Virus record (IMG/VR): IMGVR_UViG_3300046787_000408
Location: 1-64,000 of that record
Length of the DNA: 64,000 bases
Strand: one strand, 5' to 3'
Below the pieces are notes generated by a model, which worked only from the letters and a program-made list of their open reading frames with translations, did not search any database and had not been told where the DNA came from. Below, one piece after another: positions 37,650 to 56,777 of the stretch. The stretch's first letter is position 1; each line of letters starts with the position of its first letter. The position numbers were made by a program, and so were the translations under genes.

Positions 37650-37687
37650 TTGACTAAAACTTTATTTCGTGCTAACATACATAAATA
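37650..37687 (+). promoter_or_regulatory. Tandem sigma70 and late promoters for the HNH gene
   Basis: TTGACT-17 nt-TAACAT (with extended TG), then ATAAATA 5 nt before ATG 37693. Confidence 0.65.
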
Positions 37688-37692
37688 ACATT

Positions 37693-38439
37693 ATGAACAA
37701 ATACACTCGTTGGTACAACCAAATAGTCAAAAACGCTCAAACTCGTGTAACAGAAGGGTATGTTGAACGTCATCATATACAACCACGTAGTCTTGGCGGA
37801 GCAGATACACCAGACAATCTTGTTGAACTGACTGCACGTGAACATTTTGTTTGCCATTGGTTGTTGACCAAAATGACCACAGGTGAAGATAGATACAAAA
37901 TGCTAAATGCACTGCGAATGATGCGAGCAGAAAAAGAAGGTCAGCAACGTTATAACACTTCAATAACTAGCAGAGTATATGAAAGCATCAAACAAGAATA
38001 TGCAGAGCTACAGTCAATCTTGCGTTCTGGCGAAGGCAACGGATTCTACGGTAAAACACATACTGATGAAGCTAGGCGTAAGATAAGTGAAGCCAATAAA
38101 GGCCGTATCCAACCGCCTGAAGAAAAAGCAAAACAGATAACGGCTATCACTGGTCGAAAACGTGCTCCGTTTTCAGACGAGTGGCGTGCTAAAATGTCTG
38201 CTTCTAAATTAGGCGAAAACAACAATAGATATGGCGTTGAGCTCAGTGATAAAACCAAACAAAAAATACGAGAGAAAGCAACAGGCCGCAAACAGTCAGC
38301 AGAAACAATCCAAAAGAAAGCAGATGCTATTCGTGGAATCAAAAGAGAGAAAAAGCTGTGCCCTCACTGCGGCCAAATGATTGCTGTGAACACATTCTCC
38401 CGTTGGCACGGTACCAACTGTGTTGCCGTCAAAGTTTGA
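37693..38439 (+). CDS. Free-standing HNH homing endonuclease with NUMOD3-type repeats
   Basis: ERHHIQPRSLGGAD...NLVELTAREHFVCHWLL; FYGKTHTDEARRKISEA-type repeats; terminal CPHC. Start moved to ATG 37693, after the promoter. Confidence 0.9.
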   Translation: MNKYTRWYNQIVKNAQTRVTEGYVERHHIQPRSLGGADTPDNLVELTAREHFVCHWLLTKMTTGEDRYKMLNALRMMRAEKEGQQRYNTSITSRVYESIKQEYAELQSILRSGEGNGFYGKTHTDEARRKISEANKGRIQPPEEKAKQITAITGRKRAPFSDEWRAKMSASKLGENNNRYGVELSDKTKQKIREKATGRKQSAETIQKKADAIRGIKREKKLCPHCGQMIAVNTFSRWHGTNCVAVKV

Positions 38440-39071: not shown

Positions 39072-40220
39072 TTAGACCTTGAACCACGAGAGATATTGGG
39101 AAACACGATCAGTCACACTGTTCCAGTCTCCCATGGCAGGTTGTCTAAACAATCTAGCAGTAGCATACCAAGGTGAATCATCTCGATTCAACAACCAACG
39201 CCAGTCAGTGCTGAACCAATTGAGCATGATCCAGACTGGTCTTCCTAAACTACCGGCCAAATGCGCTACTGCGGTATCTACACTAATAATCACATCCATG
39301 TGCATCATTTGTGCAGCAGTGTCGGCCCATTGATATTGACTAGGCGGCAAACAGTGTACTCCTGCTGCTTTTAATTCATCTTCTTCTTCAGCGGTACAAT
39401 CAGCCTGCAAGTTGATCCACTCGTGCTGAGGATTTTTACGTATCAACTCTAACATTTGTTCAAAGGGCATACCTTTGTGACGATTTAACCAGTTATCTCT
39501 ACGTCCACTCCAGCTAAACCCCACACGCATACGATGCTTGGGCCCAAAGTAGTCTAGCCATCTACGTTGCAGTCCTGCATCAGCATTAAGATAATTTACT
39601 GGACGAGGCATGTTGTCCAATGTGACTCCTAGTATACCCGGGATGCTCATGATCGGAGTCCAGTAATCAAAGTCGTTCACAGTGTAGTCATAACCGCTGA
39701 CTCTTTTAATAATTGGGCTGGCACTAAGCATAGGAACCAAACCATCTGTAACTTGCAAAATAATTTCAGCGCCCATCACATGCAGATTGTATACAAAACG
39801 CACAAACTGAATGTTGTCTCCGTGTCCTTGTTCGCCTACCACAAGAATAGTTTTGCCCTGAAGATCCTCACCGCGCCATCTTGGCTGTGTAAATGGTGGC
39901 ATTGTATTGGCTAGATGTTCATAGTCCCATCGAGTTTCGTATGCTGGCCATCCTTGGGCATAGTCTCCAGACAACAAATGAGCCACTGCAAGATTGAATT
40001 TTGCAGTTACATTGGAGGGTTCCAATTGAATAGCCCTTTGCAAAAACGGTATAGCTGCTTGGGGTTCTCCAACTTCTCGTAGCACATTACCGTAGTTGTT
40101 GAATGCAGCCGACGAATTGCGATCCTGTGCAAATGCCAAGGCGTAGCATTGCAAAGCCTGTTCGGGCTGATCATCGGACCGGTGTTGATTGCCTTGATCT
40201 ATAAGTTGATTTGTGTTCAC
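39072..40220 (-). CDS. TPR-repeat glycosyltransferase (GT-B, GT9-like C-terminus)
   Basis: TPRs (AFNNYGNVLREVG...), EQGHGDNIQFVRF, DVIISVDTAVAHLAGSLGRPVW, DWRW. Probable start is GTG 40220, 4 nt after TAAATA (40230-40225). Confidence 0.85.
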   Translation of the reverse strand: MNTNQLIDQGNQHRSDDQPEQALQCYALAFAQDRNSSAAFNNYGNVLREVGEPQAAIPFLQRAIQLEPSNVTAKFNLAVAHLLSGDYAQGWPAYETRWDYEHLANTMPPFTQPRWRGEDLQGKTILVVGEQGHGDNIQFVRFVYNLHVMGAEIILQVTDGLVPMLSASPIIKRVSGYDYTVNDFDYWTPIMSIPGILGVTLDNMPRPVNYLNADAGLQRRWLDYFGPKHRMRVGFSWSGRRDNWLNRHKGMPFEQMLELIRKNPQHEWINLQADCTAEEEDELKAAGVHCLPPSQYQWADTAAQMMHMDVIISVDTAVAHLAGSLGRPVWIMLNWFSTDWRWLLNRDDSPWYATARLFRQPAMGDWNSVTDRVSQYLSWFKV

Positions 40221-40260
40221 TGAATATTTAATGCTGCGGTAGTTGTAGTGTAGATTTTCA

Positions 40261-40358
40261 TAAATACTTGTCAACACAATCAGGTGTTTTATGCTGGGAC
40301 TAACTACCCACAGCGTAGCGGCTAGAACCCGCATCGGACTTCTTTAAGGAGAAAACAA
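40261..40358 (+). promoter_or_regulatory. Late promoter and ~90 nt structured 5' leader
   Basis: TAAATA 40261-40266; stems AACAC/GTGTT, TGGG/CCCA, GCGG/CCGC; TAAGGAG RBS. Confidence 0.55.
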
Positions 40359-41060
40359 ATGGGTCGTCCTCTAAAAATTAAAAAATCTACCACTAGCGAT
40401 ATTGGTTTCAATCCGTTCAGCGCACTAACAAACCCAGTATATCCATCAACTCCTACTGTGTTTGATGGTACTGAGTATTTGGGTGTTGTTGGTGGTGCCA
40501 ATGCCAACGTAGCATCTACTGCATTTCCAGTAGTCAAGTGCCGTGCGTTTATCGCAGGTACAAGCGCAGAAGATGATGCATACATCATCACACAAAAAGG
40601 CACAACCAAGTATCAAGTGGCTACAGTAAGTGCTATCAATGACGAAGACATTGTGGCCGGACGTGCATACAGAATCTTGGCAGTGGGAACTACCAACTGG
40701 GCAGCCATTGGAGCCAGCGGTTCCGCTGCGGTAGGCGATGTGTTTACAGCCACAGGTGCTGGTGCAGGTACAGGTACTGTGCAAGCAGTGGGCACATGTA
40801 TTCTAGCCAACCAAGCTGATACTGCATTGACTTCGGGCAACATGAACATCACATTCAGCACTGGCGACAGTACTGCTCAATTGATCAGCAAGCTGACCAA
40901 CAAGTTTGCTTTGGATTACAGCACACCGCCAGTTCGTTATTTGACCAACTTCTTCAGTGACGAAGGTTACGAAATCAAGTCAGGTACCACTGGTGCCGCC
41001 AACGTAACCGGACAACAAAACCAAGTTAGCTTGGCAATTGTAGAGAACTTTACTTCGTAA
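40359..41060 (+). CDS. Putative virion structural protein
   Basis: 233 aa, Thr/Gly/Ala-rich, own late promoter, strong RBS and terminator. Confidence 0.65.
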   Translation: MGRPLKIKKSTTSDIGFNPFSALTNPVYPSTPTVFDGTEYLGVVGGANANVASTAFPVVKCRAFIAGTSAEDDAYIITQKGTTKYQVATVSAINDEDIVAGRAYRILAVGTTNWAAIGASGSAAVGDVFTATGAGAGTGTVQAVGTCILANQADTALTSGNMNITFSTGDSTAQLISKLTNKFALDYSTPPVRYLTNFFSDEGYEIKSGTTGAANVTGQQNQVSLAIVENFTS

Positions 41061-41075
41061 TATCTCCCAACTCCA

Positions 41076-41109
41076 AATCCTCTCAGCTACATACTGGGAG
41101 GATTTTTTT
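41076..41109 (+). terminator. Rho-independent terminator
   Basis: AATCCTCTCAG-ctacata-CTGGGAGGATT followed by a T run. Confidence 0.75.
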
Positions 41110-41694
41110 ATGAGCAGAGCATTTGTATTGGGTAATGGCGTAAGCCGACAACAGATTGATCTAAACAATCTACGACATTTGGGCAAGATTTATGGGTGCA
41201 ACGCCCTGTACAGAGATTTTGTTCCTGATGTGTTGGTCAGCACAGATAAACCTATCAGCACTAGAATACAAGATTCGGGATACGCTCATAACAACAGATT
41301 TTACACTCGACGCCCTGAACCTGGGAATGGTGCTCATCCTGTTCCACAAAAGTACTATGGCTACAGTTCAGGGCCCATTGCTGCTAGCATTGCAGCAATA
41401 GATGGCGCTGTAATAATTTATCTTGTGGGTTTTGACATGGGCCCAGTCAATAGCCATTTCAACAATGTGTATGCTGATACTGAATTTTACAAAAAAAGCT
41501 CAGCTCCGCCTACTTTTACTGGTAATTGGGCCAGACAACTAACACAAATCATGCGTGATTTCCCCAACACGGCTTTTGTAAGGGTAATGGGAGATACCAC
41601 AGCACCCGTTGATGATTTTTCTAGCTCACGAAACTTCAGAACCATGCCCATGGTGGACTTTCAAAACCGTATAAATAACACAAAGGATCTTTAA
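41110..41694 (+). CDS. Maf/DUF115-like (sialyltransferase-like fold) protein
   Basis: AFVLGNGVSR, IYGCNALY, PDVLVSTD, SSGPIA, IYLVGFDM. Confidence 0.6.
   Translation: MSRAFVLGNGVSRQQIDLNNLRHLGKIYGCNALYRDFVPDVLVSTDKPISTRIQDSGYAHNNRFYTRRPEPGNGAHPVPQKYYGYSSGPIAASIAAIDGAVIIYLVGFDMGPVNSHFNNVYADTEFYKKSSAPPTFTGNWARQLTQIMRDFPNTAFVRVMGDTTAPVDDFSSSRNFRTMPMVDFQNRINNTKDL
41670..41677 (+). promoter_or_regulatory. Late promoter TATAAATA for the first fibre gene
   Basis: Exact consensus, followed by AAAGGA RBS and ATG 41695. Confidence 0.75.
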
Positions 41695-44499
41695 ATGTCT
41701 ACCTACAAGCGTGTTAACGGCGATTATACAATTCAAACACTTGGTGCAAACACCATCACCTTTGCAGGTAACGTTGCTAACGCAGTCACAGTTGTGGTGG
41801 ACGGTAATTTCACAGTAACTGGCAACGCTACTTTGACTGGTAATATTTCCGGCGACAAACTGTTTAACGGAACAACGTCAATTGAAATCCCCGCAGCCAA
41901 CGGCAACGCTAATGTAACAGTAGGTGGCACATCTAACGTAGCAGTGTTTACCACAACAGGCCTTAACATCAGTGGGGTAGCCAGCGTAAGTGGCAACATT
42001 GTTGGCGGCAATCTTAACACAGCTGGCCTGGTGTCAGCTACTGGTAACATCAATGGTGGGAACGTTAACACCGCAGGTAATGTAACTATCACACGTGATG
42101 CTAGTGTGAGTCAACCAACAATACGATTTGCAGACACAGACACTACTGGTACCGCAGGCACAGTGCTAGGCGCAGTTGAATGGTTTACTAGTGATGTTAC
42201 CGCTGCAGGCGTGACCGCAGCAATTAGAGCAACACTGGTTGACACTGGCGGAAACAGTAACGTACAAATTTTAACAGGAACTCCGGGTAGTCTTGCAGCC
42301 AGAGTTACTGTATTGCATACAGGAAATGTGGGTGTTGCTAACGCAGCCCCAGACACCACAATAGGAGTTACTGGTACAGCGTACATAAGTGGTAACACCA
42401 CAGTTGCAGCCAATATTTCAGGTGGCAACATTTCCACAGCTGGATTAATCGCAGCAACAGGCAATATCACTGGTGGTAATATCAACACTGCTGGCCTGGT
42501 AACAGCTACTGGTAACATTACTGGTGGCAACATTATTACAGCAGGCACAATTTCTGCTGGTGCAGCTGGAATAACAGCCACTGGCAATATTCGTGGCGGC
42601 AACTTGGTAAGTGACGCTGCAATTACTGCTACAGGTAGCATTGCGTCAGGCGCTAGTATAACAGCCCAAGATCAAATCAGCGCACAAGGCAACGTGATTG
42701 CTAACAACATCAGTGCTGGTAACATTATCAATACTGGTATTCTAAATGCCACCAGTAACGTTAGCGCAACTGGCAACGTTACTGGATCAAATTTGGTAAC
42801 TGGTGGCGCAGTTACAGCAGTAGGTGCAGTCACAGGCGGAAGTATCACTACAGGCGGATTGATAACTGCTACAGGCAACATTACAACCAGCGCATTTTTT
42901 GTAGGCGATGGTGGATTTTTATCCAACGTTACGGCTATCTCAAACGTTACCACAAGCCAGATTACTAACGGTACCACAGTAATGGCCGTTGCAGGCCCCA
43001 ATGGCAATATTTTTGCTACAGTCAATGCTGTGGGAAATATTTTGGTATTGTCTGACACTGGTGCTTTTGTTACTGGCACATTGTCAGCAACTGGAAACGT
43101 AACTGGTGCCAATGTTAATACTGCAGGATTGGTCAGCGCAACAGGAAACGTCAATGGTGGAAACGTTAATGGTGGCATTGGTAACTTTACCACTGTGATT
43201 GGTGCAGCAAATGCATCCAGTTTGACATCAGGTACTGTGTCAGCTGACCGACTAAGTGGCAGTTATGTGATCAACGTTACTGGTAACGTGAGTGGTACAG
43301 CCGCTACAGTAACCAATGGTGCTCAAGCCAACATTACTTCAGTAGGCACATTGACTTCTTTGAGTGTGAGTGGCAACATCAACACTGGAGGGGTATTCAG
43401 CGCAACTGGTAATATCACTGGTGGAAACGTCAGCACTGGCGCATTGAGTTTGAGCGGCAATGTACTAAGTGCAATCAACACTACTAGTGCAATTACTACC
43501 ACAGCCAATATCACTGGTGGCAACATCTTGGGCGGTGCCAATGTAAACGCTACCACTCATACAGGTACTACAGTAAGTGTTACTGGAAATATCACTGGTG
43601 GCAACTTGATTACCGCTGGGCTTGTGAGTGCAGGTACAACAATTAGTGCTACTGGCAACATTACCGGTGGTAACTTGATTACTGCAGGATTGATTACGGC
43701 AACTGGTAACATCAGTGCAACTGCTAACATATCAGGCGGCAATATTAGAACAACAGGTACAACTAATACTGTTGGCTTGATTGCTAGTGGTACAATTAGC
43801 GCTAGTGGTTCAATTAGTGGAGCTGACCTACTTTTGGTTGACGGTGTTGCAAACATTGGCGGTTTCATAATTGATAGTAGTGCAACACCTACTGGGCCAA
43901 CCTTTATGTCTGGGCCTGGTGGTAACCTTGAGATTGTTGGGAATGTTTCTGCTGATCGACTTACTTCTGCGGGTAACATCACTGGCGGCAATTTAATCAC
44001 CAGTGGTACTACAGGCATTTTGAGTGTTAACAGTATCACTCACACTGGCACAAATGCAGTGGGTAATATTGGTAGTGCCAGCAGTTATTTCAACCAGGTG
44101 TTTGCCACAGCTACCACTGCACTTTATGCTGACTTGGCAGAAAAATATGCAGCAGACGCTGATTATGAACCAGGTACTGTGGTAAGTTTTGGCGGCACAG
44201 CAGAAGTCACCGCCAGCGTAGTCAGTGCTGATCGAAAAATTGCTGGTGTAGTATCTGCTAACCCTAGCTATTTGATGAACGCTGGACTTGAGTCAGCACA
44301 TACTGTTGTGGTTGCACTGCAAGGTCGTGTGCCATGCAAGGTGGTTGGTACAGTTCAAAAAGGCGATATGATGATATCAGCTGGCAACGGCCGAGCACAA
44401 GCCTGTGAAAACCCACTAGTGGGATCTGTGATTGGTAAAGCCCTGGAAAACTTTGATGGTGTTGAAGGCACAATTGAAGTTGTAGTAGGCAGAATCTAA
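41695..44499 (+). CDS. Tail fibre-like protein with TGNITGGN repeats and a C-terminal intramolecular-chaperone-like domain
   Basis: Many ATGNITGGNI repeats; C-terminal ADLAEKY...YEPGTVV...GVVS..P...VALQGRVPCKV...IGKALE. Confidence 0.8.
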   Translation: MSTYKRVNGDYTIQTLGANTITFAGNVANAVTVVVDGNFTVTGNATLTGNISGDKLFNGTTSIEIPAANGNANVTVGGTSNVAVFTTTGLNISGVASVSGNIVGGNLNTAGLVSATGNINGGNVNTAGNVTITRDASVSQPTIRFADTDTTGTAGTVLGAVEWFTSDVTAAGVTAAIRATLVDTGGNSNVQILTGTPGSLAARVTVLHTGNVGVANAAPDTTIGVTGTAYISGNTTVAANISGGNISTAGLIAATGNITGGNINTAGLVTATGNITGGNIITAGTISAGAAGITATGNIRGGNLVSDAAITATGSIASGASITAQDQISAQGNVIANNISAGNIINTGILNATSNVSATGNVTGSNLVTGGAVTAVGAVTGGSITTGGLITATGNITTSAFFVGDGGFLSNVTAISNVTTSQITNGTTVMAVAGPNGNIFATVNAVGNILVLSDTGAFVTGTLSATGNVTGANVNTAGLVSATGNVNGGNVNGGIGNFTTVIGAANASSLTSGTVSADRLSGSYVINVTGNVSGTAATVTNGAQANITSVGTLTSLSVSGNINTGGVFSATGNITGGNVSTGALSLSGNVLSAINTTSAITTTANITGGNILGGANVNATTHTGTTVSVTGNITGGNLITAGLVSAGTTISATGNITGGNLITAGLITATGNISATANISGGNIRTTGTTNTVGLIASGTISASGSISGADLLLVDGVANIGGFIIDSSATPTGPTFMSGPGGNLEIVGNVSADRLTSAGNITGGNLITSGTTGILSVNSITHTGTNAVGNIGSASSYFNQVFATATTALYADLAEKYAADADYEPGTVVSFGGTAEVTASVVSADRKIAGVVSANPSYLMNAGLESAHTVVVALQGRVPCKVVGTVQKGDMMISAGNGRAQACENPLVGSVIGKALENFDGVEGTIEVVVGRI

Positions 44500-44553
44500 T
44501 CTTTTGACACCGTAAGCGCAGTTTTTGCTGAATTAGTAGATAAAGTCTTTTGG

Positions 44554-44559
44554 TAAATA
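44554..44559 (+). promoter_or_regulatory. Late promoter
   Basis: ggTAAATAc followed by GAGGA RBS. Confidence 0.65.
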
Positions 44560-44581
44560 CAACCAGAGGACTTGAATCTAC

Positions 44582-45199
44582 ATGACACAACAGATCATTG
44601 ATGTTGGCGCTGCGGCCAACGACGGCACAGGTGAACCGTTACGTACCGCATTTGAAGCTGTAAATTCTAATTTTACAGAAATTTACACGGCTGGTCCAGT
44701 TGGTAGCAATATCCAAATTGCCAACAACACTATCACCACCACAGTTACAAACACCAACCTGGTACTAAAACCCAATGGTATTGGCGTTATACAAGCCAAC
44801 GCCGCAGTGCTGCCCAGTATCGACAACGTGTACGACATTGGTAGCCCGACTCTGAGATTTGACACTATCTATGCTGGTTACTTTGTGGGTAACGGTGCAT
44901 TGCTTACTGGTATCTCAGGAGGCTCAGGAAACGGCCAGGCAATCGTCAATGGCAACTCCAATGTAGCAATCTCCACATCCGGCGGCAATGTAACCATTGG
45001 TATCAACGGCACCGGCAACGTAGTTACAGTAAGCCAAACGTCACTGTTTGTCAATGGCGTAATAGCAACTCCTCGCACACTTTCTGCCAACATTGCAGTT
45101 CAAGCAAACGTATCTGCAATGATGGTAAGCCCATTAACAATCCCTAGTGGATTGCAAATTACCGTACCCAGCTCATCAACATTCAATGTGGTACCATAA
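44582..45199 (+). CDS. Fibre connector with a gp9/gp10-like N-terminal motif
   Basis: QIIDVGAAANDGTGEPLRTAFEAVNSNFTEIY matches the T4 gp9/gp10 N-terminal DGTG.LR....N.NF.E.Y motif. Confidence 0.75.
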   Translation: MTQQIIDVGAAANDGTGEPLRTAFEAVNSNFTEIYTAGPVGSNIQIANNTITTTVTNTNLVLKPNGIGVIQANAAVLPSIDNVYDIGSPTLRFDTIYAGYFVGNGALLTGISGGSGNGQAIVNGNSNVAISTSGGNVTIGINGTGNVVTVSQTSLFVNGVIATPRTLSANIAVQANVSAMMVSPLTIPSGLQITVPSSSTFNVVP

Positions 45200-45202
45200 A
45201 TA
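45197..45202 (+). promoter_or_regulatory. Late promoter
   Basis: caTAAATAt overlapping the stop codon, then AAGGA RBS. Confidence 0.6.
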
Positions 45203-45223
45203 TAAGATTAAAGGACTGAATAA

Positions 45224-51200: not shown

Positions 51201-52615
51201 GTGGAAACATCAGTACAGCAGGTCGACTAACAGTAACTGGCAACATTGCAGGCAACAACATTTCAGCAATTGGACTGGTTTCTACCAAAGACATTAGTGC
51301 AAGTGGTAACATCAACGTTGATGGCACCGTTGACATTGTTGGTAATACCACAGTAACTGCTGACTTTACGGCTGGCAACTTGAACTCTGGTGGCATTGCA
51401 CTTGTAACTGGCAACGTAATTGGTGGCAACTTGATCACTGGTGGGTTTGTTTTTGCAAGCGGCAACGTTAGCGGTAGCAACATCAATGGTACAAATGTAT
51501 ATTCAACTGGTGTTGTAAGCTCTACTGGTAACATTACTGGTGGCAACTTGATTACCGCAGGACTAATTAGTGCTGCTGGCAACATCATTGCCAACAATAT
51601 TGTTGGTACATTGGTAATGTCAACTGCTAACACCCAAGTGGCATTCAATGACAATGGTATTGTTGGTGGCACCGCAGGATTTGTATTTGATAAAGTGGGC
51701 AATGTGTTCACAGTTGGCGGCCCAATCAGCACAGCCAATGGTGGCAATATTACTGCTGCTGGGGCACTGAGTGCAACTGGTAATATCACAACCAATACTG
51801 GCAACATCACTGGTGGTAACATCGCTACTGCTGGTACAGTTACTGCTACAGGCAACATTACTGGTGGCAACATTGACACCAGTGGCGAACTCACAGTTGG
51901 TGGCAACATTGTAGCAAGTCAAGACATTACTGGCTTGAATTTGAACGCTAGCGGATATGCTCTGGTTACAGGCAACATCATTGGTGGCAATTTGATCACT
52001 GGTGGATACGTGTTGTCAACAGGATCTGTAACTGGTGGTAATTTGTTAACTGGTGGCAGAGTTAGTGCAACAGGTAACATTACCGGCGGTAACTTGATCA
52101 GTTCAACACTAAGCTTGTCTGGTAACGTACTAGGTAACCTCAATATTGACGGTGGTGCTACAGGCGCATTCTTCAACAGTACTGGTGCAGTAAGTGCTGT
52201 GGGTAATGTCAACAGCGGCAACTTGCAAGTGACTGGAACAGGTACCGTAGCTACCTTGGTAGTGACATCAACTCACAGTGTGACTGGCAACATCACTGGT
52301 GGTAACGTCAACACTGGTGGATTGGTATCTGCTACTGGCAACGTTAACGGTGGTAACGTCAACGCAGGCGGCATAGTTAGTTCAGTTGGCAACGTAATAG
52401 CTACTGGTAATGTTACTGGTGGCAACGTCACAACCGGAGGCATAGTAACTTCTACAGGTAATGTTCGCGGTGGTAACATCACAACAGGTGGTCAGGTAAG
52501 CGCAACTGGTAACATTACCGGCGCTAACTTGGCAGTTTCGGGAGTGATAAATATCAATAACCAGAGAGCTGCAACAGTAGATGACGCAATTGCGTTGTCA
52601 ATAGCATTAGGATAA
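45224..52615 (+). CDS. Giant fibre protein (2463 aa), G/N/T/A/V/I/S repeats
   Basis: Dense SATGNITGGN repeats punctuated by GNG(A/S)xLTG; several internally duplicated modules. Confidence 0.85.
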   Translation: MAIELDGTTGISASGNIQAANITASGNVTATYFVGNGAALTGIVASAGAAITNGTSNVSIGGSGANVTVSVDGIGNVAVFSKTDLTISGNLLPTGNVSKNIGSATNAFNDLFLANGTIYLGNATISANATSIILTNESGQTTVLTGSGTVTPYGNSNVATLLAGFGSNTISTTGNVTAGFFLGDGSQLTNLPSGNYSNANVAAYLPTYTGNLVALQGNVTTTANISASYVLGNGAFLTGISGGGTPTSIVNGTSNVVAASSGNVTVGVAGTGVATFATTGEYVTGVISASGNITSGANVSGNYILGNGAFLTGVASSYGNADVSSYLASGTDTANIVTTGNVTGGNVTTAGLISATGNITGGNLNATGLSLSGNVVSAINTTANITTTANIAGGNIQGTTGDILNVTSTNLTVTNISAPSSGNIVNIGAGGNNNLVVSNVLVQVQNVPLSVNGNVVGGNLTTAGQVSATGNISAANVVVTPGVGTLVLGRATATGSPGLSSTTSLTFTANRAGTASSMELSDNGVLSVPGNIYTAANVSGGNLITTGNVNAAWASLGNVGNIAVLAANALFQITANAASNTAPYWTFNTDGTMYVPGNISGDNGGALIIDGNGLGEGIISLPATAFGGEQIAIINQFSLGNGIRLQTNGGNWHFSDAGSLTTPGNVTATGILSATGNIITTANISGGNLSVTGAFAPASVAATGNVAGGNLTTQGIVSAVGNIVTDGYFVGNFAGNITGNIVVPGANTQILFNTNGNADAVGGLTYNKDSNVFAVLGNVSAQGNVIAGNVSTVGNISAGNISVTSAVAGATVSASGNVTGGNINTAGLISATGNIIGGNLSGTNIVGTLTTAAQTNITSVGTLGSLAVTGNISGGNLSGTSIVGTLTTAAQTNITSVGTLGSLAVTGNIGGGNLNATGLSLSGNVVSAINTTANITTTANISGNFILGNGSQLTGLPATYGNANVAANLAAFGSNPILTTGNITGGNLNATGLSLSGNVVSALVSAANITTTANISGGYILGNGAFLTGVAASYGNSNVAAYLPTYTGNLVALQGNVTTTANVQANYFIGNGAALTGIVASAGAAITNGTSNVTVAASGNTTVGVAGTTIGTFHPGGATVAGNLLAGNLTGTFVTGTLTTASQPNITTIGTLGSLAVTGNVAGGNISTGGLITATGNINGANITTGGVVTATGNVRGGNINTDGVLSSTGGVNTIGNITGGNLITSGTVSATGNISGGNVNTGALSLSGNVLSAINTTSAITTTANITGGNINTTGLAASGNVSATGTVTAADLSATGNVQATYFNGTGISLSGNVISPLNVTGNVTASYYFGNGSQLTGVVATGIGTLASLSVTGNTVSGNLITGGLITATGGITTNAAVVAASLSTTGNVVIGGDLAVNGNISYINVSTLAIEDPIIEMGRGPNNAPLVANDGKDRGLDLWYYDSTEKQAFVGLDTLNDKLFAAVDVSVANEVVTVNSYGTFVVGDLESTSVATATISATGNVTGGNLFTGGYIDATGNISTTANIAGGNLIVGPVYSSGNVNAANVNASGTISAASATLTGTVTGGNIATGGTVSASGNITGGNVNTATVAATTVSATGNVTGGNVNTTVLYTTTISAAGNIIGGNVNATGLSLSGNVVSALNVTGTVTGGTVNSAGAVSAVGNVTGGNINTTGIVSAQGSIVSAANVTGANITTLGLISAFGNITGGNLSGVSIEGTLLTASQTNITAVGTLASLAVTGNVGAGNVNATGLSLSGNVLSAINTTSAITTTANITSGNLATTAIQAATVSLSGNIVSALNVTGNVTAPFFIGNGSQLTGVVATGIGTLASLSVTGNTVSGNLETGGVVTATGNIIGGNLITGGFVTAVGNVNGANIGTAGLITATGNITSSANIAGGNIGATGIISAVGTITGGNVSTGGFVFALGNVEGGNVNTGGVNAATVSATGTITGGNLATGGTVSATGNITGGNVSTGLITATGNITSSANIAGGNISTAGRLTVTGNIAGNNISAIGLVSTKDISASGNINVDGTVDIVGNTTVTADFTAGNLNSGGIALVTGNVIGGNLITGGFVFASGNVSGSNINGTNVYSTGVVSSTGNITGGNLITAGLISAAGNIIANNIVGTLVMSTANTQVAFNDNGIVGGTAGFVFDKVGNVFTVGGPISTANGGNITAAGALSATGNITTNTGNITGGNIATAGTVTATGNITGGNIDTSGELTVGGNIVASQDITGLNLNASGYALVTGNIIGGNLITGGYVLSTGSVTGGNLLTGGRVSATGNITGGNLISSTLSLSGNVLGNLNIDGGATGAFFNSTGAVSAVGNVNSGNLQVTGTGTVATLVVTSTHSVTGNITGGNVNTGGLVSATGNVNGGNVNAGGIVSSVGNVIATGNVTGGNVTTGGIVTSTGNVRGGNITTGGQVSATGNITGANLAVSGVININNQRAATVDDAIALSIALG

Positions 52616-52621
52616 AACGAA

Positions 52622-52954
52622 ATGGCAAACACTTTTACAAGAAAACTGAGTCAAAACATCGGAACTTCGGCAATTGATGTTGGAGGCTACACAGTAGCAG
52701 CCAACACCACAGTTGTGGTTGTGGGATTGACTATCACAAACAAAACCGGAAGCTCTATAGCAGCCAACGTTTTTATCAGCGATGGAGCAGCTAACACTTA
52801 TGTCACTGCAAACGCTCCAATTTCTTCAGGATCAAGCTTGGTTGCAGTAGGTGGCGATCAAAAGGTTGTGCTATTAACTGGAGACAAAATCTACGTTCAA
52901 AGCAGTGCAGCCAGCTCGTTGGATGCAGTCCTAAGTATTCTGGAAATTACATAA
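52622..52954 (+). CDS. Small beta-rich fibre-associated protein
   Basis: 110 aa between fibre genes; MANTF...KVVLLTGDKIYV...LSILEIT. Confidence 0.7.
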   Translation: MANTFTRKLSQNIGTSAIDVGGYTVAANTTVVVVGLTITNKTGSSIAANVFISDGAANTYVTANAPISSGSSLVAVGGDQKVVLLTGDKIYVQSSAASSLDAVLSILEIT

Positions 52955-52955
52955 T

Positions 52956-55900
52956 ATGAGTTATATCGGTCTCAACCCAAATGTACCACTACTGAACGCT
53001 AGCACTGAGCAGTTTAGTGGCAATGGTTCGTCACAACAGTTTACGCTAAGTCGTAACGTTGCTTCGGCTAGTGATCTGGATGTGTTGATCAACAACACAG
53101 CCCAACGTCCCGGGACCGATTACGATGCAGAAGGTACTACACTATTATTCACAGTTGCACCCGGTGCTGGTGTCAACAATATCACTGTTACTTTCCGTGG
53201 CGGCGCATTAAACACATTAGACCTGCAAGCAACTGCATTTCCTGCAGGAACTGAAGGTGCACCAGGAGTGTACAGTTTAGCAGCCAACAACTCAGGTTTG
53301 TATTGGGGTAATGCAACATCAATGGCAGTGACCATTGCTGGAGTAGACAAAGCTACATTCAATTCCAATTCTGCTAGTACCAGTAACGTTACTGGCGCAT
53401 TAACACTCAACGGTGGCCTAGGTGTAAGTGGCAACATTAACTCTAGTGGACAACTTCGAGTAACAGATACCACACAAAGTGGCAATATCAGTACTGGTGC
53501 TGTGACTATTGCTGGCGGACTTGGCGTTACAGCCAACGTCAACGTAGGTGGCAACATTGTGGTAGTAGGGGACTTTACTGTAAATGGAACATTTACAACC
53601 ACTGGTACTGACAGCCTGGACGTTACAGATCCTTTTATCTTTTTGGCCAACAACAATCCTGGCGACACATTTGATACTGGTATTGTTGCTCAATATTTTG
53701 ACGGTGCTAACACACGTTACACTGGTTATTTTCGAGACGTAACTGATGGGCAATACAAGTTTTTTGGAAACTTGTTAACAGAGCCTACTACCACAGTAGA
53801 TACTAACGCTGCAAGTTTTGCATATGCCAACGTGGTAGGCGGAAACTTGCAAGCTATTGGCAATGTAACTGGAACTTATTTTATTGGTAATGGAAGTCAG
53901 TTAACTGGTATTTCAGTTGACACAACTCAAATTGCCAACAGCAATTCCAAAGTGGTTATTGCTAGTCCTAACGGCAGCATTGTATCCAACGTCAACAACA
54001 TCACAGTTGGTGTTGTTAGCTCTACTGGTCTAGCAGTTACTGGAGTAGTAACTGCGTCAGCTAATATCAGCGCAACTGGAAACGTCTTGGGTGCAAATGT
54101 GCAAACTGGAGGTTTGATAACAGCAACTGGTAATATCACCAGCGCTGCTAATATCGCTGGCGGCAACATCAGCTCGGGCGCACAAGTCAGCGCAGTAGGC
54201 AACATCACTGGTGGTAATGTTATCACTGGAGGATTGGTTACAGCAACTGGAAACATTCAAGGTGCTAACCTTCGTAGCGGTGGATCAGTTATTGCAGCTG
54301 GAGACATTCAAGCCGGTGGAGACCTAAGCGGCGATAACATCTTAACTGGCGGAACTATCAGTGCAACCGGCAACATTACCGGTGGCAACATTGATACAGC
54401 TAGATTGGTAGCTAATTCAACTATATCGGCTACAGGAACCATTACTGGTGGCAACATTGCTACAGGTGGCACAGTTAGTGCTGTGGGCAATATCACTGGT
54501 AACTACATTTTAGGTAATGGATCATTGCTGTCTGGTTTAAGCACCAGCAGTATCAGCAATGGAACATCCAACGTTAGAGTTATTGCCAACGCCAACGTTA
54601 CTATTCAAGTCAATAGCACAGCCAACGTTTTGGTTGCTGCTACCGACGGTGTTTATGTAACTGGTGATGTTAGTGCTACAGGTAACGTAACTGGTGGCAA
54701 CATTATTACATCAGGCTCAGGCGGAAACATTACTGGTGCCAACGTTATTACAGCCAGCACATTGAGTGCTACTAGTGGTGTTAACGCAACTGGCAACATC
54801 ACCGGTGGTAATTTGATTACTGGTGGCCTAGTTACTGCTACAGGAAATATCCGAGGTGGTAACATAGTTACAGGCGGATTGGTTAGTGCAGTTGGTGCAG
54901 TTAATGCAGCTAGCTTGGCTCTAACTGGTGCTATTACAGGAGCAACCACAATCAGTGCCAGCGGCACAGTTACAGGTGGTAATCTAGCAACTACTGGATC
55001 AATCACTGGTGGTGGTATAATCAGCACCACAGGCAACGTCACAGGCGGTAATTTTATCACAGCTGGACTGATTACAGCAACTGGCAATATTTCTGCAACT
55101 GCCAACGTCAGTGGCGGAAATATTTTATCTGGTGCAGCAATCAATGGTGCAAGTCTAAGTGTAAGCGGCAACATCTCTGCAAACAATGCATCGTTTACCA
55201 ATATTGTCACAGCAGCCAATGCCGCAGCAGACACCAATACAAATCAAGTTGCTACTACAGCATATGTAATTGGACAAGCCAGTGCAACGACTCCAACTTC
55301 AATTGGCACCAATACTGTTGGTACTAGTACTAGATATGCTCGTGCAGACCACACTCATACAGGCGTTGGTAGTTTAACCACATCTGGTACTGGTATCAGT
55401 GTTAATGCCACAACAGGTGCTATTACTCTGACTAGTAATGCAAACACTGCTAACTCAGCCAGTACATTAGTAGCACGTGACTCTGCTGGTAACTTTGCAG
55501 CCAACACAATTACAGCTACTTTGAGCGGCGCAGCCACTAGTGCTGGTACCGCTACCACAGCAGGTACTGTTACAGGTAACGCTCAGGCCAATATTACTAG
55601 TGTTGGTACACTGACCAGTTTGGCAGTTACTGGCAATATTACATCAGGTAATTTGAGTGGTACTAGCATTGTAGGTACATTAACCACAGCGTCACAGACC
55701 AATATTACAGCGGTAGGTACGTTGGGCAGTTTGGCGGTAACCGGCAATATCACATCAGGTAATTTGAGTGGTACTAGTATTGTAGGTACACTGACTACTG
55801 CGTCACAGACCAACATCACAGCAGTGGGTACATTAGGTAGCCTGGCAGTAACCGGCAATGCAAGTTCTGCAACAGCCGCAGCAGACACAAACACAACACA

Positions 55901-56777
55901 GTTAGCTACCACAGCGTTTGTGATAGGCCAAGCAAGTTCAACAACTCCTTCAGTAATTGGCGCTGCTGGTGTAGTAGGCACAAGTTTGCGTTATGCTAGA
56001 GCTGATCACACACACGAAGGTGTAACAAGTGTTGCAACTGGAACAGGTATCAGCACAAGTGCAGCAGACGGTGCAATCACATTAACTAACACAGGTGTTA
56101 CTAGTGTTGTGGCAGGTACCAACATTGCAGTCAGCGCCGCAACAGGTGCAGTTACAGTTAGCGTTACAGGTACTGTACCAACAGCAACATCGGCAACCAC
56201 AGCAGGTACTGTAACTACAGCGGCACAAGGCAACATTACATCAGTTGGTACGTTGACTAGCTTGGCTGTTAGCGGTGCAATCACAGTAAACTCAGGTGGG
56301 GCAGCAACTGCTATCGTCAACGGCACCTCAAGTGGTGTGGGCAACATTGGTAGTGCAGCCACTACGTTCAACACTGTTTTTGCCAAAGCAACTACAGCAC
56401 AGTATGCTGACTTGGCAGAAAATTATGCAGCAGATGCTGAATACGAACCAGGCACAGTGGTTGACTTTGGCGGTGCAGCCGAAGTTACTATGAGTCATGA
56501 ATCAGGAAGCACTAGAATTGCTGGTGTGGTTTCTACACAACCAGCTTACTTGATGAACAGTCACATGGAAGCTGAATATGTTGCAGCAGTGGCCTTGATG
56601 GGAAGAGTTCCAGTCAAAGTTACAGGACCAGTTCGCAAGGGCGACATGATGATATCAGACGGACACGGACGTGCAAAATCAGCTGTTCGACCAGAAATGG
56701 GCTCTGTAATTGGCAAAGCTCTAGAAAACTTTGATGGCGCTTATGGCGTGATCGAAGTTGTTATAGGTAAAATGTAA
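52956..56777 (+). CDS. Tail fibre-like protein (1273 aa) with a C-terminal chaperone-like domain
   Basis: MSYIG..P N-terminus, FSGNGSSQQFTL beta module, GNITGGN repeats, two YARADHTH motifs, ADLAENY... C-terminus paralogous to that of 41695-44499. Confidence 0.8.
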   Translation: MSYIGLNPNVPLLNASTEQFSGNGSSQQFTLSRNVASASDLDVLINNTAQRPGTDYDAEGTTLLFTVAPGAGVNNITVTFRGGALNTLDLQATAFPAGTEGAPGVYSLAANNSGLYWGNATSMAVTIAGVDKATFNSNSASTSNVTGALTLNGGLGVSGNINSSGQLRVTDTTQSGNISTGAVTIAGGLGVTANVNVGGNIVVVGDFTVNGTFTTTGTDSLDVTDPFIFLANNNPGDTFDTGIVAQYFDGANTRYTGYFRDVTDGQYKFFGNLLTEPTTTVDTNAASFAYANVVGGNLQAIGNVTGTYFIGNGSQLTGISVDTTQIANSNSKVVIASPNGSIVSNVNNITVGVVSSTGLAVTGVVTASANISATGNVLGANVQTGGLITATGNITSAANIAGGNISSGAQVSAVGNITGGNVITGGLVTATGNIQGANLRSGGSVIAAGDIQAGGDLSGDNILTGGTISATGNITGGNIDTARLVANSTISATGTITGGNIATGGTVSAVGNITGNYILGNGSLLSGLSTSSISNGTSNVRVIANANVTIQVNSTANVLVAATDGVYVTGDVSATGNVTGGNIITSGSGGNITGANVITASTLSATSGVNATGNITGGNLITGGLVTATGNIRGGNIVTGGLVSAVGAVNAASLALTGAITGATTISASGTVTGGNLATTGSITGGGIISTTGNVTGGNFITAGLITATGNISATANVSGGNILSGAAINGASLSVSGNISANNASFTNIVTAANAAADTNTNQVATTAYVIGQASATTPTSIGTNTVGTSTRYARADHTHTGVGSLTTSGTGISVNATTGAITLTSNANTANSASTLVARDSAGNFAANTITATLSGAATSAGTATTAGTVTGNAQANITSVGTLTSLAVTGNITSGNLSGTSIVGTLTTASQTNITAVGTLGSLAVTGNITSGNLSGTSIVGTLTTASQTNITAVGTLGSLAVTGNASSATAAADTNTTQLATTAFVIGQASSTTPSVIGAAGVVGTSLRYARADHTHEGVTSVATGTGISTSAADGAITLTNTGVTSVVAGTNIAVSAATGAVTVSVTGTVPTATSATTAGTVTTAAQGNITSVGTLTSLAVSGAITVNSGGAATAIVNGTSSGVGNIGSAATTFNTVFAKATTAQYADLAENYAADAEYEPGTVVDFGGAAEVTMSHESGSTRIAGVVSTQPAYLMNSHMEAEYVAAVALMGRVPVKVTGPVRKGDMMISDGHGRAKSAVRPEMGSVIGKALENFDGAYGVIEVVIGKM
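55632..55853 (+). repeat. Tandem 111 bp (37 aa) coding repeat
   Basis: GNITSGNLSGTSIVGTLTTASQTNITAVGTLGSLAVT occurs twice with synonymous differences; a near-identical unit occurs twice at about 47730-47950. Confidence 0.8.

What the first reader, a model, noticed from the sequence alone, without database searches (positions are those of the whole stretch)
39072..56777. Possible virion glycosylation system: TPR-glycosyltransferase and Maf-like gene beside sequon-dense fibres
Seen: a late-promoter TPR-GT and a Maf/DUF115-like gene lie immediately upstream of about 4700 aa of fibre protein whose repeat unit (GNIT, GNVT, GNIS, ANIT) places an N-x-T/S sequon in most repeats, with abundant Ser/Thr and very few charged residues. 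Established: TPR-GTs often act on proteins; Maf proteins glycosylate flagellin; cytoplasmic HMW1C-type enzymes glycosylate N-x-S/T in repetitive adhesins. Inference: the phage glycosylates its fibres for solubility, shielding or host recognition. Caveat: N-x-T may simply reflect beta-fibre geometry, and the GT looks GT9-like rather than HMW1C-like.
Basis: partly seen in the sequence, partly recalled or inferred. Interest (0 to 1): 0.6.

Follow-up and report, generated by a model that had tools for sequence, protein, structure and literature searches.

The report
Phage sugar-transferase genes beside uncharged fibres
An uncultured aquatic T4-like jumbo phage encodes two real sugar-transferase-like enzymes next to three giant, almost uncharged tail fibres; they may O-glycosylate the virion, but the N-x-S/T "sequon" argument fails and no glycan has been shown.

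Summary
39072-40334(-) is a TPR plus GT9-fold glycosyltransferase. 41110-41694(+) is a 194-aa minimal Maf/GT42-type enzyme: the best fold match is Maf 5mu5, and its family profile hits Cst-II at 5e-8. They precede 4670 aa of fibre built from a 17-residue G-N-[IV]-x-G-G-N repeat with 3-6% charged residues.

Three claims need correcting:
- **Sequon:** N-x-S/T is only 1.6-fold above shuffled sequence. Only 39% of Asn have S/T at +2, and other spaced residue pairs of the same repeat are more enriched.
- **Enzyme type:** no N-glycosylating enzyme (GT41/HMW1C) is present. As protein modifiers, both families found are known only for O-linked modification.
- **Timing:** the GT has a conserved sigma-70-type promoter and no late motif. 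The Maf-like gene lies in a late operon.

Comparison of about 150 related contigs shows two patterns. The Maf-like family (at least 1315 clusters, almost all viral) always sits in the late head/fibre cluster, whatever the fibre type. The GT occurs only in the lineage with the uncharged repeat fibres.

No sugar-nucleotide synthesis genes were found, so donors would come from the host. O-glycosylation of virion proteins is my best reading (confidence 0.4) and is unproven.

The parts
39072..40334 (-). TPR + GT9-fold glycosyltransferase (420-aa ORF). The real start is probably the GTG at 40220, giving 382 aa as in most homologues.
   Evidence: TPR Pfam hits at residues 50-135. The GT domain 155-420 matches GT9 3tov Z 17.9, WaaF 17.0, WaaC 16.1 and TibC 15.7. 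hhalign to E. coli WaaC gives E 7e-6 over the VDT..HLA donor motif. Homologues are mostly 382 aa. GTG at 40218-40220.
40247..40274 (-). sigma-70-type promoter-like site for the GT (TTGACA-16-TACACT)
   Evidence: The same type of site (TTGAC.-N-TA...T) is present in 33 of 58 distinct related intergenic regions.
40259..40266 (+). late-promoter motif CATAAATA, 100 nt upstream of p233; it lies inside the spacer of the GT promoter on the other strand
   Evidence: 19 of 24 genome copies lie 8-80 nt upstream of an ORF. Conserved in 39 of 58 relatives.
40359..41060 (+). p233: conserved but fast-evolving protein with no known family; a possible abundant virion protein
   Evidence: No Pfam, PHROG, NCBIfam or PDB match. 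Always upstream of the Maf-like gene in the window lineage, at 35-90% identity while the MCP stays at 94-100%. Followed by a hairpin.
41075..41105 (+). terminator-like hairpin (12-bp stem, T run) between p233 and the Maf-like gene
41110..41694 (+). minimal Maf/GT42 (DUF115-superfamily) enzyme, 194 aa
   Evidence: Model pLDDT 84. Best of 48,161 chains is Maf 5mu5, Z 11.5 over 165 residues; then Cst-I 9.3 and MptE kinase 9.0. The family profile hits Cst-II at 4.7e-8. 7 of 81 relatives hit PF01973 and 5 hit PF06002. phrog_4603 sialyltransferase 5e-5.
41670..41677 (+). late-promoter motif TATAAATA inside the end of the Maf-like gene, 25 nt before the fibre start
41695..44499 (+). fibre 1 (934 aa): 17-residue G-N repeats plus a C-terminal domain shared with fibre 3 and with a PA5oct virion protein
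   Evidence: phrog_22593 and phrog_19602 tail fibre at residues 783-918. 37% identity to PA5oct gp359.
44582..45199 (+). 205-aa fibre connector with a T4 gp9/gp10-like N-terminus
   Evidence: phrog_677 baseplate wedge tail fibre connector 1.7e-12. PF07880 weak.
45224..52615 (+). fibre 2 (2463 aa): 146 G-N-[IVL] motifs, 3% charged residues, late motif at 45195
   Evidence: Weak FapA beta-solenoid match.
52622..52954 (+). 110-aa small fibre-module protein
   Evidence: phrog_26609 and phrog_1276, function unknown.
52956..56777 (+). fibre 3 (1273 aa) with the same repeat and C-terminal domain

Best explanation
The locus joins two cytoplasmic sugar-transferase-type enzymes to the tail-fibre module of an uncultured T4-like jumbo phage.

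**The Maf/GT42-like enzyme (41110-41694).** It is made late, by read-through from the p233 late promoter. It is a stripped-down relative of Maf and Cst-I/II that keeps their nucleotide-binding motifs (GNGxS, GCN, SSG, GFD). I infer that it transfers a CMP-activated ulosonic acid taken from the host, CMP-Kdo being the obvious candidate. The acceptor would be Ser/Thr, or a first sugar, on a virion protein made at the same time: the fibres and/or p233.

**The TPR-GT9 enzyme.** It is made from a host-type promoter. It has the build of FlmG, OGT and SPY (a TPR acceptor-binding arm plus a GT-B catalytic domain), but its catalytic domain is of the heptosyltransferase type, as in TibC/Aah. I infer that it O-glycosylates the uncharged, Ser/Thr-rich repeat fibres, with which it co-occurs, and so gives them a hydrophilic coat.

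**Shown:** the folds, motifs, promoter motifs, synteny and co-occurrence.

**Inferred:** catalysis, donors, acceptors, and that any glycan exists. The N-x-S/T motif is a by-product of the repeat, not a recognition site.
For: **Enzyme identity**
- GT9 fold with the donor motif aligned to WaaC.
- Conserved GEQGHGD, K287, D353-T354 and H358.
- The P0003 fold is closest to Maf. Its family profile hits only GT42 sialyltransferases in the PDB. Only PF01973 and PF06002 are found among 81 relatives. The ESM Atlas's nearest named cluster is MptE-like.

**Context**
- The order MCP-GT-p233-P0003-fibre-connector holds in about 70 of 80 related contigs.
- In 76 more distant loci the P0003 family stays inside the late head/fibre cluster, in three different arrangements.
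- In another T4-like lineage it lies between the major capsid gene and a cluster of hexapeptide acyltransferases, methyltransferases and a Capsule_synth gene.
- The GT is found only in the lineage with the repeat fibres. GT-less lineages have fibres with 12-19% charge, 0-4 GN[IVL][TS] motifs and almost no sequon excess. PA5oct, which lacks both genes, has no such fibres.
- Distant GT homologues in three other phages sit among fibre or capsid genes, next to other modifying enzymes.
- Cellular homologues sit beside pilin-type genes, not LPS core genes.

**Precedents**
- FlmG's TPR arm binds flagellin and its GT-B domain sets the donor (PMC7591256; 10.1101/2022.03.25.485807).
- Maf can use CMP-Kdo in E. 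coli (PMC11339370).
- Mycobacteriophage virions are glycosylated (as cited in PMC12619734).

**Timing:** late motifs precede p233 and the fibres.
Against: - There is no direct evidence of a glycan.
- The GT appears to be an early, host-promoter gene and has no late motif in 58 relatives. That fits a host target as well as a virion one.
- The GT has been lost (L054) or replaced by a homing endonuclease (L071) in relatives. In L071 the fibre is still the uncharged repeat type.
- The link between the GT and the repeat fibre rests essentially on one lineage.
- The Maf-like gene is not tied to fibres. In many lineages it lies between the portal and prohead-core genes. Pelagiphage paralogues lie among replication genes and 2OG-oxygenase genes.
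- P0003 itself has no Pfam hit.
- P0003 lacks Maf's acceptor-binding domains. No conserved His matches the Cst-II catalytic His188.
- An MptE-type kinase fold scores nearly as well (Z 9.0).
- No NeuB, CMP-sugar synthetase or GmhA was found in 300 kb of an estimated 81%-complete genome.
Confidence: 0.4

Rival explanations
1. The TPR-GT9 enzyme acts on the host, not the virion. It would be made early from a host-type promoter and would alter LPS core or a host surface protein such as a pilin. The effect would be to block superinfection, or to stop progeny phage from sticking to infected cells and debris. Its position next to the fibre genes would then be incidental, or would reflect the receptor that those fibres recognise.
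For: - A sigma-70-type promoter is conserved in 33 of 58 relatives, with no late motif on the GT strand.
- Most characterised GT9 enzymes are LPS heptosyltransferases, which are the best fold matches.
- The GT is dispensable in some relatives.
- Cellular homologues lie next to pilin or usher genes.
Against: - TPR arms fused to GT-B domains are the hallmark of protein-directed enzymes.
- The gene is found only in the lineage with the unusual fibres.
- Distant phage homologues sit in structural modules.
- An early enzyme can persist until fibres are made.
Confidence: 0.22
2. The 194-aa protein is not a glycosyltransferase. It could be an MptE- or thiamine-pyrophosphokinase-type small-molecule kinase, or a non-catalytic head/fibre assembly factor that has kept a Rossmann-like core.
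For: - MptE kinase (Z 9.0), SteA (9.3) and thiamine pyrophosphokinases (Z 6-8) follow Maf closely in the fold search.
- 7 of 81 relatives hit the MptE-like Pfam model.
- There is no conserved His at the Cst-II catalytic position.
- In many lineages the gene sits among prohead-core genes.
Against: - In the PDB the family profile hits only GT42 sialyltransferases, at 5e-8 to 1e-6, with the GNGxS, GCN, SSG and GxD motifs aligned.
- The top fold match is Maf.
- The strictly conserved polar residues (N9, R13, N31, D46, D109, N118-N119, Y121, Y127) point to an enzyme.
Confidence: 0.13
3. One reading: cytoplasmic N-glycosylation of the N-x-S/T sequons in the fibre repeats, as HMW1C does.
For: Sequons are 1.6-fold above shuffled expectation. 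TPR + GT-B enzymes (OGT, SPY) appear in the Foldseek list.
Against: - No GT41 match in the genome.
- OGT-type matches rest on the TPR arm. The catalytic domains superpose at rmsd 14-16 A, against 3.1-3.3 A for GT9.
- Only 39% of Asn carry S/T at +2, and stronger couplings (G-x-I/L/V) show that the repeat drives the signal.
- The G-N pairs recur at fixed positions of a 17-residue unit. This looks like beta-solenoid turn or ladder positions (inference).
Confidence: 0.03
4. One or both enzymes modify phage DNA, or make a free glycan, rather than modifying protein.
For: Phage glycosyltransferases often act on DNA (reviewed in PMC12619734). Pelagiphage paralogues of the 194-aa protein lie among replication genes, 2OG-oxygenase genes and a carbamoyltransferase gene.
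Against: In the window lineage and about 150 related loci the gene is embedded in the late structural cluster. The TPR arm suggests a protein partner. No known DNA glycosyltransferase appeared among the fold matches.
Confidence: 0.06

Closest known systems
Maf flagellin glycosyltransferases (DUF115/MptE-like; structure 5mu5)
   Same: The catalytic core fold is the best structural match (Z 11.5 over 165 of 194 residues). Relatives hit PF01973. Maf enzymes O-glycosylate Ser/Thr on a repetitive surface filament using CMP-ulosonic acids, including Kdo (PMC11339370).
   Different: Only the central domain is present: 194 aa against more than 600. Maf's N- and C-terminal domains, TPR arm and GlfM-like adaptor are missing. 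P0003 itself does not reach any Pfam model. There are no nonulosonic-acid synthesis genes in the genome. The context is phage head/fibre genes, not flagellar genes.
GT42 sialyltransferases Cst-I/Cst-II (Campylobacter) and the Pasteurella LOS sialyltransferase
   Same: These are the only significant PDB sequence matches of the family profile (4.7e-8 to 1.3e-6). The GNGxS, (R/G)CN, (T/S)SG and G(I/F)D motifs align. PHROG sialyltransferase hit.
   Different: The insertion between the CN and SSG motifs (about 100 residues in Cst-II, about 55 here) is much shorter. No conserved His lies at the Cst-II His188 position. Known GT42 acceptors are lipooligosaccharides.
GT9 heptosyltransferases, including the protein O-heptosyltransferases TibC/Aah
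   Same: GT-B fold at Z 15.7-17.9. The donor-site motif aligns to WaaC residues 256-276. TibC/Aah modify Ser in repetitive beta-helical adhesins, which is a close functional analogy to repeat fibres (my own knowledge; structures 4rap and 4rb4 are among the matches).
   Different: The Pfam score is just under threshold (19.9 against 22 bits). It has an N-terminal TPR arm that GT9 enzymes lack. TibC's iron-finger and dodecamer features were not examined. There are no ADP-heptose genes in the phage.
FlmG (Caulobacter) and OGT/SPY: TPR-plus-GT-B protein glycosyltransferases
   Same: The same two-part build. In FlmG the TPR arm binds the filament protein and the GT-B domain sets the donor (PMC7591256; 10.1101/2022.03.25.485807).
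   Different: The catalytic domain here is GT9-like, not GT41-like. Direct comparison with the FlmG sequence was not possible with the tools.
Mycobacteriophage virion glycosylation (Freeman et al. 2023, as cited in PMC12619734)
   Same: Phage-encoded glycosyltransferases decorate virion proteins.
   Different: The enzyme families, the hosts (Actinobacteria) and the targets (C-termini of capsid and tail-tube subunits) all differ. In that case the glycan was demonstrated; here it was not.

Membership tests
CAZy GT9 / Pfam PF01075 heptosyltransferase family | GT-B fold superposable on WaaC/WaaF | tested here: met
   3tov Z 17.9 (251 aa, 3.1 A), WaaF 17.0, WaaC 16.1.
CAZy GT9 / Pfam PF01075 heptosyltransferase family | Score above the Pfam gathering threshold | tested here: not met
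   19.9 bits against a cut-off of 22; 20.2 bits in the genome scan. Many homologues do carry a precomputed PF01075 hit.
CAZy GT9 / Pfam PF01075 heptosyltransferase family | C-terminal donor-binding motif (V-D-T/S-G..H-L-A..G-x-P) | tested here: met
   hhalign aligns VVSVDTAIAHLAGALGRP to WaaC 256-276 (E 7e-6, 84% probability). These residues are invariant in 35 homologues. TIGR02193 partial hit at 288-378.
CAZy GT9 / Pfam PF01075 heptosyltransferase family | N-terminal G-D catalytic Asp after strand 1 | tested here: inconclusive
   An invariant GEQGHGD173 follows strand 162-166, but no alignment to WaaC covered this region.
CAZy GT9 / Pfam PF01075 heptosyltransferase family | Uses ADP-heptose | not testable with these tools
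   No GmhA-type gene in the phage; any donor would come from the host.
BAHT protein heptosyltransferases (TibC/Aah) | Fold match to TibC | tested here: met
   4rb4/4rap Z 15.7 over 244 aa, no better than the LPS enzymes.
BAHT protein heptosyltransferases (TibC/Aah) | Iron-finger Cys motif and dodecameric ring | not tested
   No residue-level comparison was made.
GT41 (OGT, SPY, HMW1C N-glycosyltransferase) | GT41 catalytic domain | tested here: not met
   No PF13844 match in the genome. OGT-type chains superpose only at rmsd 14-16 A.
GT41 (OGT, SPY, HMW1C N-glycosyltransferase) | N-terminal TPR arm fused to a GT-B domain | tested here: met
   TPR at 50-135 followed by GT-B at 155-420.
Maf / DUF115 (Pfam PF01973 MptE-like) | Core fold of the Maf central domain | tested here: met
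   5mu5 residues 272-517, Z 11.5, 165 aa aligned; first of 48,161 chains.
Maf / DUF115 (Pfam PF01973 MptE-like) | Direct Pfam match | tested here: not met
   No hit for P0003 or in the genome scan at E<=1. Of 81 relatives, 7 match (best 4e-13), so the link is transitive only.
Maf / DUF115 (Pfam PF01973 MptE-like) | Flanking acceptor-binding domains, or a GlfM-type adaptor | tested here: not met
   The protein is 194 aa, all of it core domain.
Maf / DUF115 (Pfam PF01973 MptE-like) | Linked nonulosonic-acid synthesis genes | tested here: not met
   No NeuB and no CMP-sugar synthetase in 300 kb. The genome is an estimated 81% complete.
CAZy GT42 (Cst-I/Cst-II) | Sequence-profile similarity with nucleotide-binding motifs | tested here: met
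   The A4 profile hits Cst-II at 4.7e-8 and Cst-I at 1e-6, with GNGxS, CN, SSG and GxD aligned. 5 of 81 relatives hit PF06002.
CAZy GT42 (Cst-I/Cst-II) | Catalytic His (Cst-II His188) | tested here: inconclusive
   There is no invariant His in 38 or 81 sequences. The aligned region is a low-confidence loop (pLDDT below 60 at residues 112-136).
Phage virion glycosylation systems | A glycan demonstrated on a virion protein | not testable with these tools
   Needs mass spectrometry or glycan staining of virions.

The most novel reading that the evidence does not exclude
Abundant aquatic T4-like jumbo phages O-glycosylate their own virions with sugars taken from the host's LPS-precursor pools. In this reading a phage-specific minimal Maf/GT42 enzyme family (at least 1315 clusters), built into the late head/fibre cluster, adds a CMP-activated ulosonic acid such as Kdo. 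In one lineage a TPR-armed GT9 protein heptosyltransferase was then recruited. This allowed the evolution of kilobase-long, almost charge-free 17-residue solenoid fibres that depend on a glycan coat for solubility or shielding.
Probability: 0.18. Interest if true: 0.8.

Novelty: new variant of a known kind. Interest (0 to 1): 0.55.

Why it matters
Protein glycosylation of phage particles has so far been shown only for mycobacteriophages, which use different enzymes.

If the system is real, it would extend virion glycosylation to widespread Gram-negative-type aquatic jumbo phages. It would also give a function to a large viral family that is currently 'unknown' (phrog_30607 and relatives). And it would offer compact enzymes, a 194-aa Maf-type core and a TPR-guided GT9, for studying how cytoplasmic O-glycosyltransferases choose repetitive acceptors.

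Even if it is not real, two results stand. The sequon argument is an artefact of the repeat. The Maf-like family is a conserved late structural-module gene.

Tried and rejected
**Searches that found nothing useful**
- A megablast of the locus against cultured phages found nothing. The phage is known only from metagenomes.
- P0003 alone and its close-homologue profile (A1) gave no PDB sequence hit. Only the broader family profile did.
- p233 has no match in Pfam, PHROGs, NCBIfam, PDB profiles or, convincingly, the ESM Atlas.
- The fibre repeat region finds no relatives among cultured phages; only the C-terminal domain does. BLAST's low-complexity filter may contribute to this.
- Four of the seven context look-ups for distant P0003 relatives landed on contigs too short to be informative.

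No read or expression evidence was obtained, and read laying was not used.

**Weak or incomplete comparisons**
- hhalign against WaaF aligned only the donor motif, weakly.
- A direct comparison with FlmG was not possible, because no FlmG sequence was available through the tools.

**Rejected ideas**
- N-linked glycosylation at the sequons.
- A late promoter for the GT.
- The Maf-like gene as a fibre-specific gene.

**Operator-note items:** no contig was taken for human, no alternative genetic code was needed, and no spliced model was involved.


Full report
**What the window is**

The window is the first 64 kb of a 300-kb IMG/VR virus record, estimated 81% complete. It carries T4-type genes: late sigma factor gp55, gp46/47, portal, prohead protease, scaffold, major capsid protein and baseplate wedge/hub. 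The major capsid protein is 65% identical to those of Pseudomonas phage PA5oct and a 349-kb Vibrio phage. No cultured phage matches the locus at DNA level. This is therefore an uncultured T4-like jumbo phage.

**The observation**

- **39072-40334(-):** TPR repeats at residues 50-135 and a weak GT9 match. Most of its thousands of metagenomic homologues are 382 aa. A GTG at 40220 fits their consensus start.
- **40359-41060(+):**
- **41110-41694(+):** the 194-aa 'Maf-like' candidate.
- **41695-44499, 45224-52615 and 52956-56777:** three fibres of 934, 2463 and 1273 aa. They are separated by small connector genes, one with a T4 gp9/gp10-like N-terminus.

The fibres are 50-54% G/N/T/S and only 3-6% D/E/K/R.

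**The sequon test**

- The three fibres hold 37, 119 and 46 N-x-S/T motifs. Residue shuffles give 23, 73 and 29 (z 3.4, 6.5, 3.7), so there is enrichment of about 1.6-fold.
- Only 203 of 523 Asn have S/T at +2. The rest have A, N, I, V or G.
- N-x-T and N-x-S rank 7th and 10th among spaced residue pairs, behind G-x-I, G-x-L and G-x-V.
- The repeat has a 17-residue period with two G-N-[IVL] motifs spaced 5 and 12 apart.
- In 62 clean units, the residue after the first G-N-[IV] is T or S in 56% of cases. The residue after the second is mostly N or I. Other positions of the unit (-3, -1, +9) are 74-79% S/T.

The sequon is thus one consequence of a G-N-[IV]-x-G-G-N solenoid-type repeat. It is not an independent signal. 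The fibres offer far more Ser/Thr than Asn-sequons.

**The TPR enzyme**

- An AlphaFold model built on 35 homologues has mean pLDDT 80.
- Foldseek lists SPY, OGT and bacterial OGT-like proteins first, but at rmsd 12-23 A; these matches rest on the TPR arm.
- Re-alignment puts GT9 enzymes first for residues 155-420: Veillonella GT9 Z 17.9, WaaF 17.0, WaaC 16.1. The protein heptosyltransferase TibC scores 15.7.
- A profile comparison with E. coli WaaC aligns the donor motif VVSVDTAIAHLAGALGRP to WaaC 256-276 (E 7e-6).
- GEQGHGD173, K287, D353-T354 and H358 are invariant in homologues.
- The Pfam GT9 score is just under threshold (19.9 against 22 bits). No GT41 domain is present in the genome.

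The protein has the build of FlmG, OGT and SPY, with a heptosyltransferase-type catalytic domain. In FlmG the TPR arm binds flagellin and the GT-B domain sets donor choice (PMC7591256; 10.1101/2022.03.25.485807).

**The 194-aa enzyme**

- It has no Pfam or NCBIfam hit. It gives a weak PHROG sialyltransferase hit (5e-5).
- Its model has pLDDT 84.
- In a search of 48,161 representative chains that does not depend on Foldseek, the best match is the central domain of Maf from Magnetospirillum (5mu5, Z 11.5, 165 residues). Next come Cst-I (9.3), SteA (9.3) and the MptE pterin kinase (9.0).
- A profile search of 1.8 billion proteins finds 1315 cluster representatives, most about 190-200 aa.
- Of 81 diverse members, 7 hit PF01973 (MptE-like/DUF115, best 4e-13) and 5 hit PF06002 (CST-I). 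No other family is hit.
- The family profile hits only GT42 sialyltransferases in the PDB: Cst-II 4.7e-8, Cst-I 1e-6, and the Pasteurella LOS sialyltransferase 1.3e-6. The GNGxS, CN, SSG and GxD motifs are aligned.
- No conserved His corresponds to the Cst-II catalytic His188. That region is a low-confidence loop.

The protein is only the catalytic core, without Maf's acceptor-binding domains.

**Timing**

- The motif [CT]ATAAATA marks late genes in this genome: 19 of 24 copies lie 8-80 nt upstream of an ORF.
- It precedes p233 (40259), the 934-aa fibre (41670, inside the end of the 194-aa gene) and the 2463-aa fibre (45195).
- It is absent from the GT strand in the window and in 58 distinct related intergenic regions.
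- The GT instead has TTGACA-16-TACACT. A TTGACA-N17-TAAAAT type site is conserved in 33 of 58 relatives. Its spacer contains the reverse complement of p233's late motif, so the two promoters overlap back to back.
- A hairpin with a T run follows p233. This suggests high p233 expression and lower read-through into the 194-aa gene.

The 'late-promoter GT' claim is therefore not supported. The Maf-like gene is late.

**Co-occurrence**

- In 80 close IMG/VR loci the order MCP-(homing endonuclease)-GT-p233-194aa-fibre-connector is nearly universal.
- Across these loci the MCP is 94-100% identical, the GT 57-91%, p233 35-90% and the fibres 29-73%.
- The GT is missing in L054. In L071 it has been replaced by a homing endonuclease, and there the fibre is still the uncharged repeat type.

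In 76 more distant loci (MCP 70-80% identical) the 194-aa family is always inside the late structural cluster, in three arrangements:

| Type | Gene order | GT |
|---|---|---|
| A | portal-194aa-core protein-protease-scaffold-MCP | absent |
| B | MCP-small p233-like-194aa-connectors-fibres | absent |
| C (window lineage) | MCP-GT-p233-194aa-fibres | present |

- Fibres of the GT-less types A and B have 12-19% charged residues and 0-4 GN[IVL][TS] motifs. Their sequon z-scores are about 0-1.8, with one at 3.3.
- PA5oct, which lacks both genes, has no such fibres.

So the GT tracks the uncharged repeat fibre, while the Maf-like gene is a general late-module gene. The GT correlation rests on essentially one lineage, with L054 as a consistent second point and L071 as a counter-example.

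**Wider context**

- Distant GT homologues (24-26% identity) in three other phages sit in structural modules:
  - between fibre genes in Synechococcus phage BUCT-ZZ01;
  - among fibre, 2OG-oxygenase, sulfotransferase and glycosyltransferase genes in S-SRM01;
  - after the capsid gene, next to FkbM-methyltransferase, GalT-like and acyltransferase genes, in a spring-water podovirus.
- Cellular homologues (28-35% identity) lie next to a GspH/FimT-type pilin gene in Dechloromonas, and inside a chaperone-usher/SCPU cluster in a Caulobacteraceae MAG. Neither is in an LPS-core operon.
- A 216-aa member of the Maf-like family in another T4-like lineage lies just upstream of gp23. It follows a cluster of hexapeptide acyltransferases, methyltransferases and a Capsule_synth gene.
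- Against a strict virion link, Pelagibacter phage HTVC008M has three paralogues. They lie among replication genes, 2OG-oxygenase genes and a carbamoyltransferase gene.

**Donors**

The 300-kb record has no NeuB, CMP-sugar synthetase or GmhA, and only one doubtful GT2-like match. Any donor must come from the host. ADP-heptose and CMP-Kdo are the obvious pools in Gram-negative hosts, and Maf enzymes can use CMP-Kdo (PMC11339370). This step is inference.

**Verdict**

The gene identifications are sound, and the setting is suggestive. The most economical reading is O-glycosylation of virion proteins, with the fibres and/or p233 as acceptors. The GT would be linked to the unusual fibres, and the Maf-like enzyme would be a general late-module enzyme.

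The N-x-S/T argument, the late-promoter claim and the idea of a fibre-specific Maf gene do not hold. Serious rivals remain: a host-directed early GT, and a non-glycosyltransferase role for the 194-aa protein. Nothing here shows that a glycan exists.

The complex prediction and the read-based checks could not be run.

Noticed in passing
window 37669-38439 (+); L071:1963-2769: A homing endonuclease gene (phrog_655, 2.5e-55) sits between the major capsid gene and the GT. In related contig L071 an endonuclease gene occupies the GT's place, and only 24 codons of the GT remain.
   Followed up: partly
window 40247-40274: Back-to-back overlapping promoters. The spacer of the sigma-70-type GT promoter contains the reverse complement of p233's late CATAAATA motif. 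The arrangement is conserved in many relatives and could act as an early-to-late switch.
   Followed up: partly
L003-L082 against window 36402-37598 and 40359-41060: There is an extreme contrast in divergence within a few kb. The capsid protein is 94-100% identical across contigs, while the adjacent p233 is 35-50% and the fibres 29-73%. This suggests diversifying selection or module exchange on exposed proteins.
   Followed up: partly
L090, L099 (MAG Haliscomenobacter sp. EUL_031, contigs of 148 and 183 kb): Two contigs binned into a Haliscomenobacter (Bacteroidota) genome are phages of this lineage, with the same MCP-GT-p233-194aa-fibre order (MCP 96% and 90% identical). This is a weak host lead.
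   Followed up: partly
own genome G000:C1:197458-200073 (outside the window): A fourth fibre-like ORF of 871 aa has the same composition (G/N/T/S 53%, 4.7 sequons per 100 aa), far from the GT and the Maf-like gene.
   Followed up: no
L002/L116 (Pelagibacter phage HTVC008M 752-1309, 4180-4983, 77489-78319): There are three paralogues of the 194-aa family in one pelagiphage. Two have an insertion between the halves of the domain. One lies next to a Nol-like carbamoyltransferase and several 2OG-Fe(II) oxygenases.
   Followed up: partly
L121:1-8651: In another T4-like lineage, a cluster of three hexapeptide acyltransferases, three methyltransferases, a Capsule_synth (KpsC/S-like) gene and a phosphodiesterase-like gene leads up to a Maf-like gene and then gp23. 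This looks like a sugar-tailoring cluster attached to the head module.
   Followed up: no
window 44040-44499 and 56340-56680 (fibre C-termini): The 934-aa and 1273-aa fibres share a charged C-terminal domain of about 150 aa (phrog_22593). It is 37% identical to the end of PA5oct virion protein gp359 and to a protein of Sinorhizobium phage Phosso. It could be a receptor-binding or chaperone-like module.
   Followed up: partly
L093:3145-8215; L104:3186-10320: Bacterial TPR-GT9 homologues occur in pairs with other TPR proteins and a GT8-like gene next to a GspH/FimT-type pilin (Dechloromonas), or between an SCPU subunit and a chaperone-usher pair (Caulobacteraceae). These may be uncharacterised pilus-glycosylation loci.
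   Followed up: no
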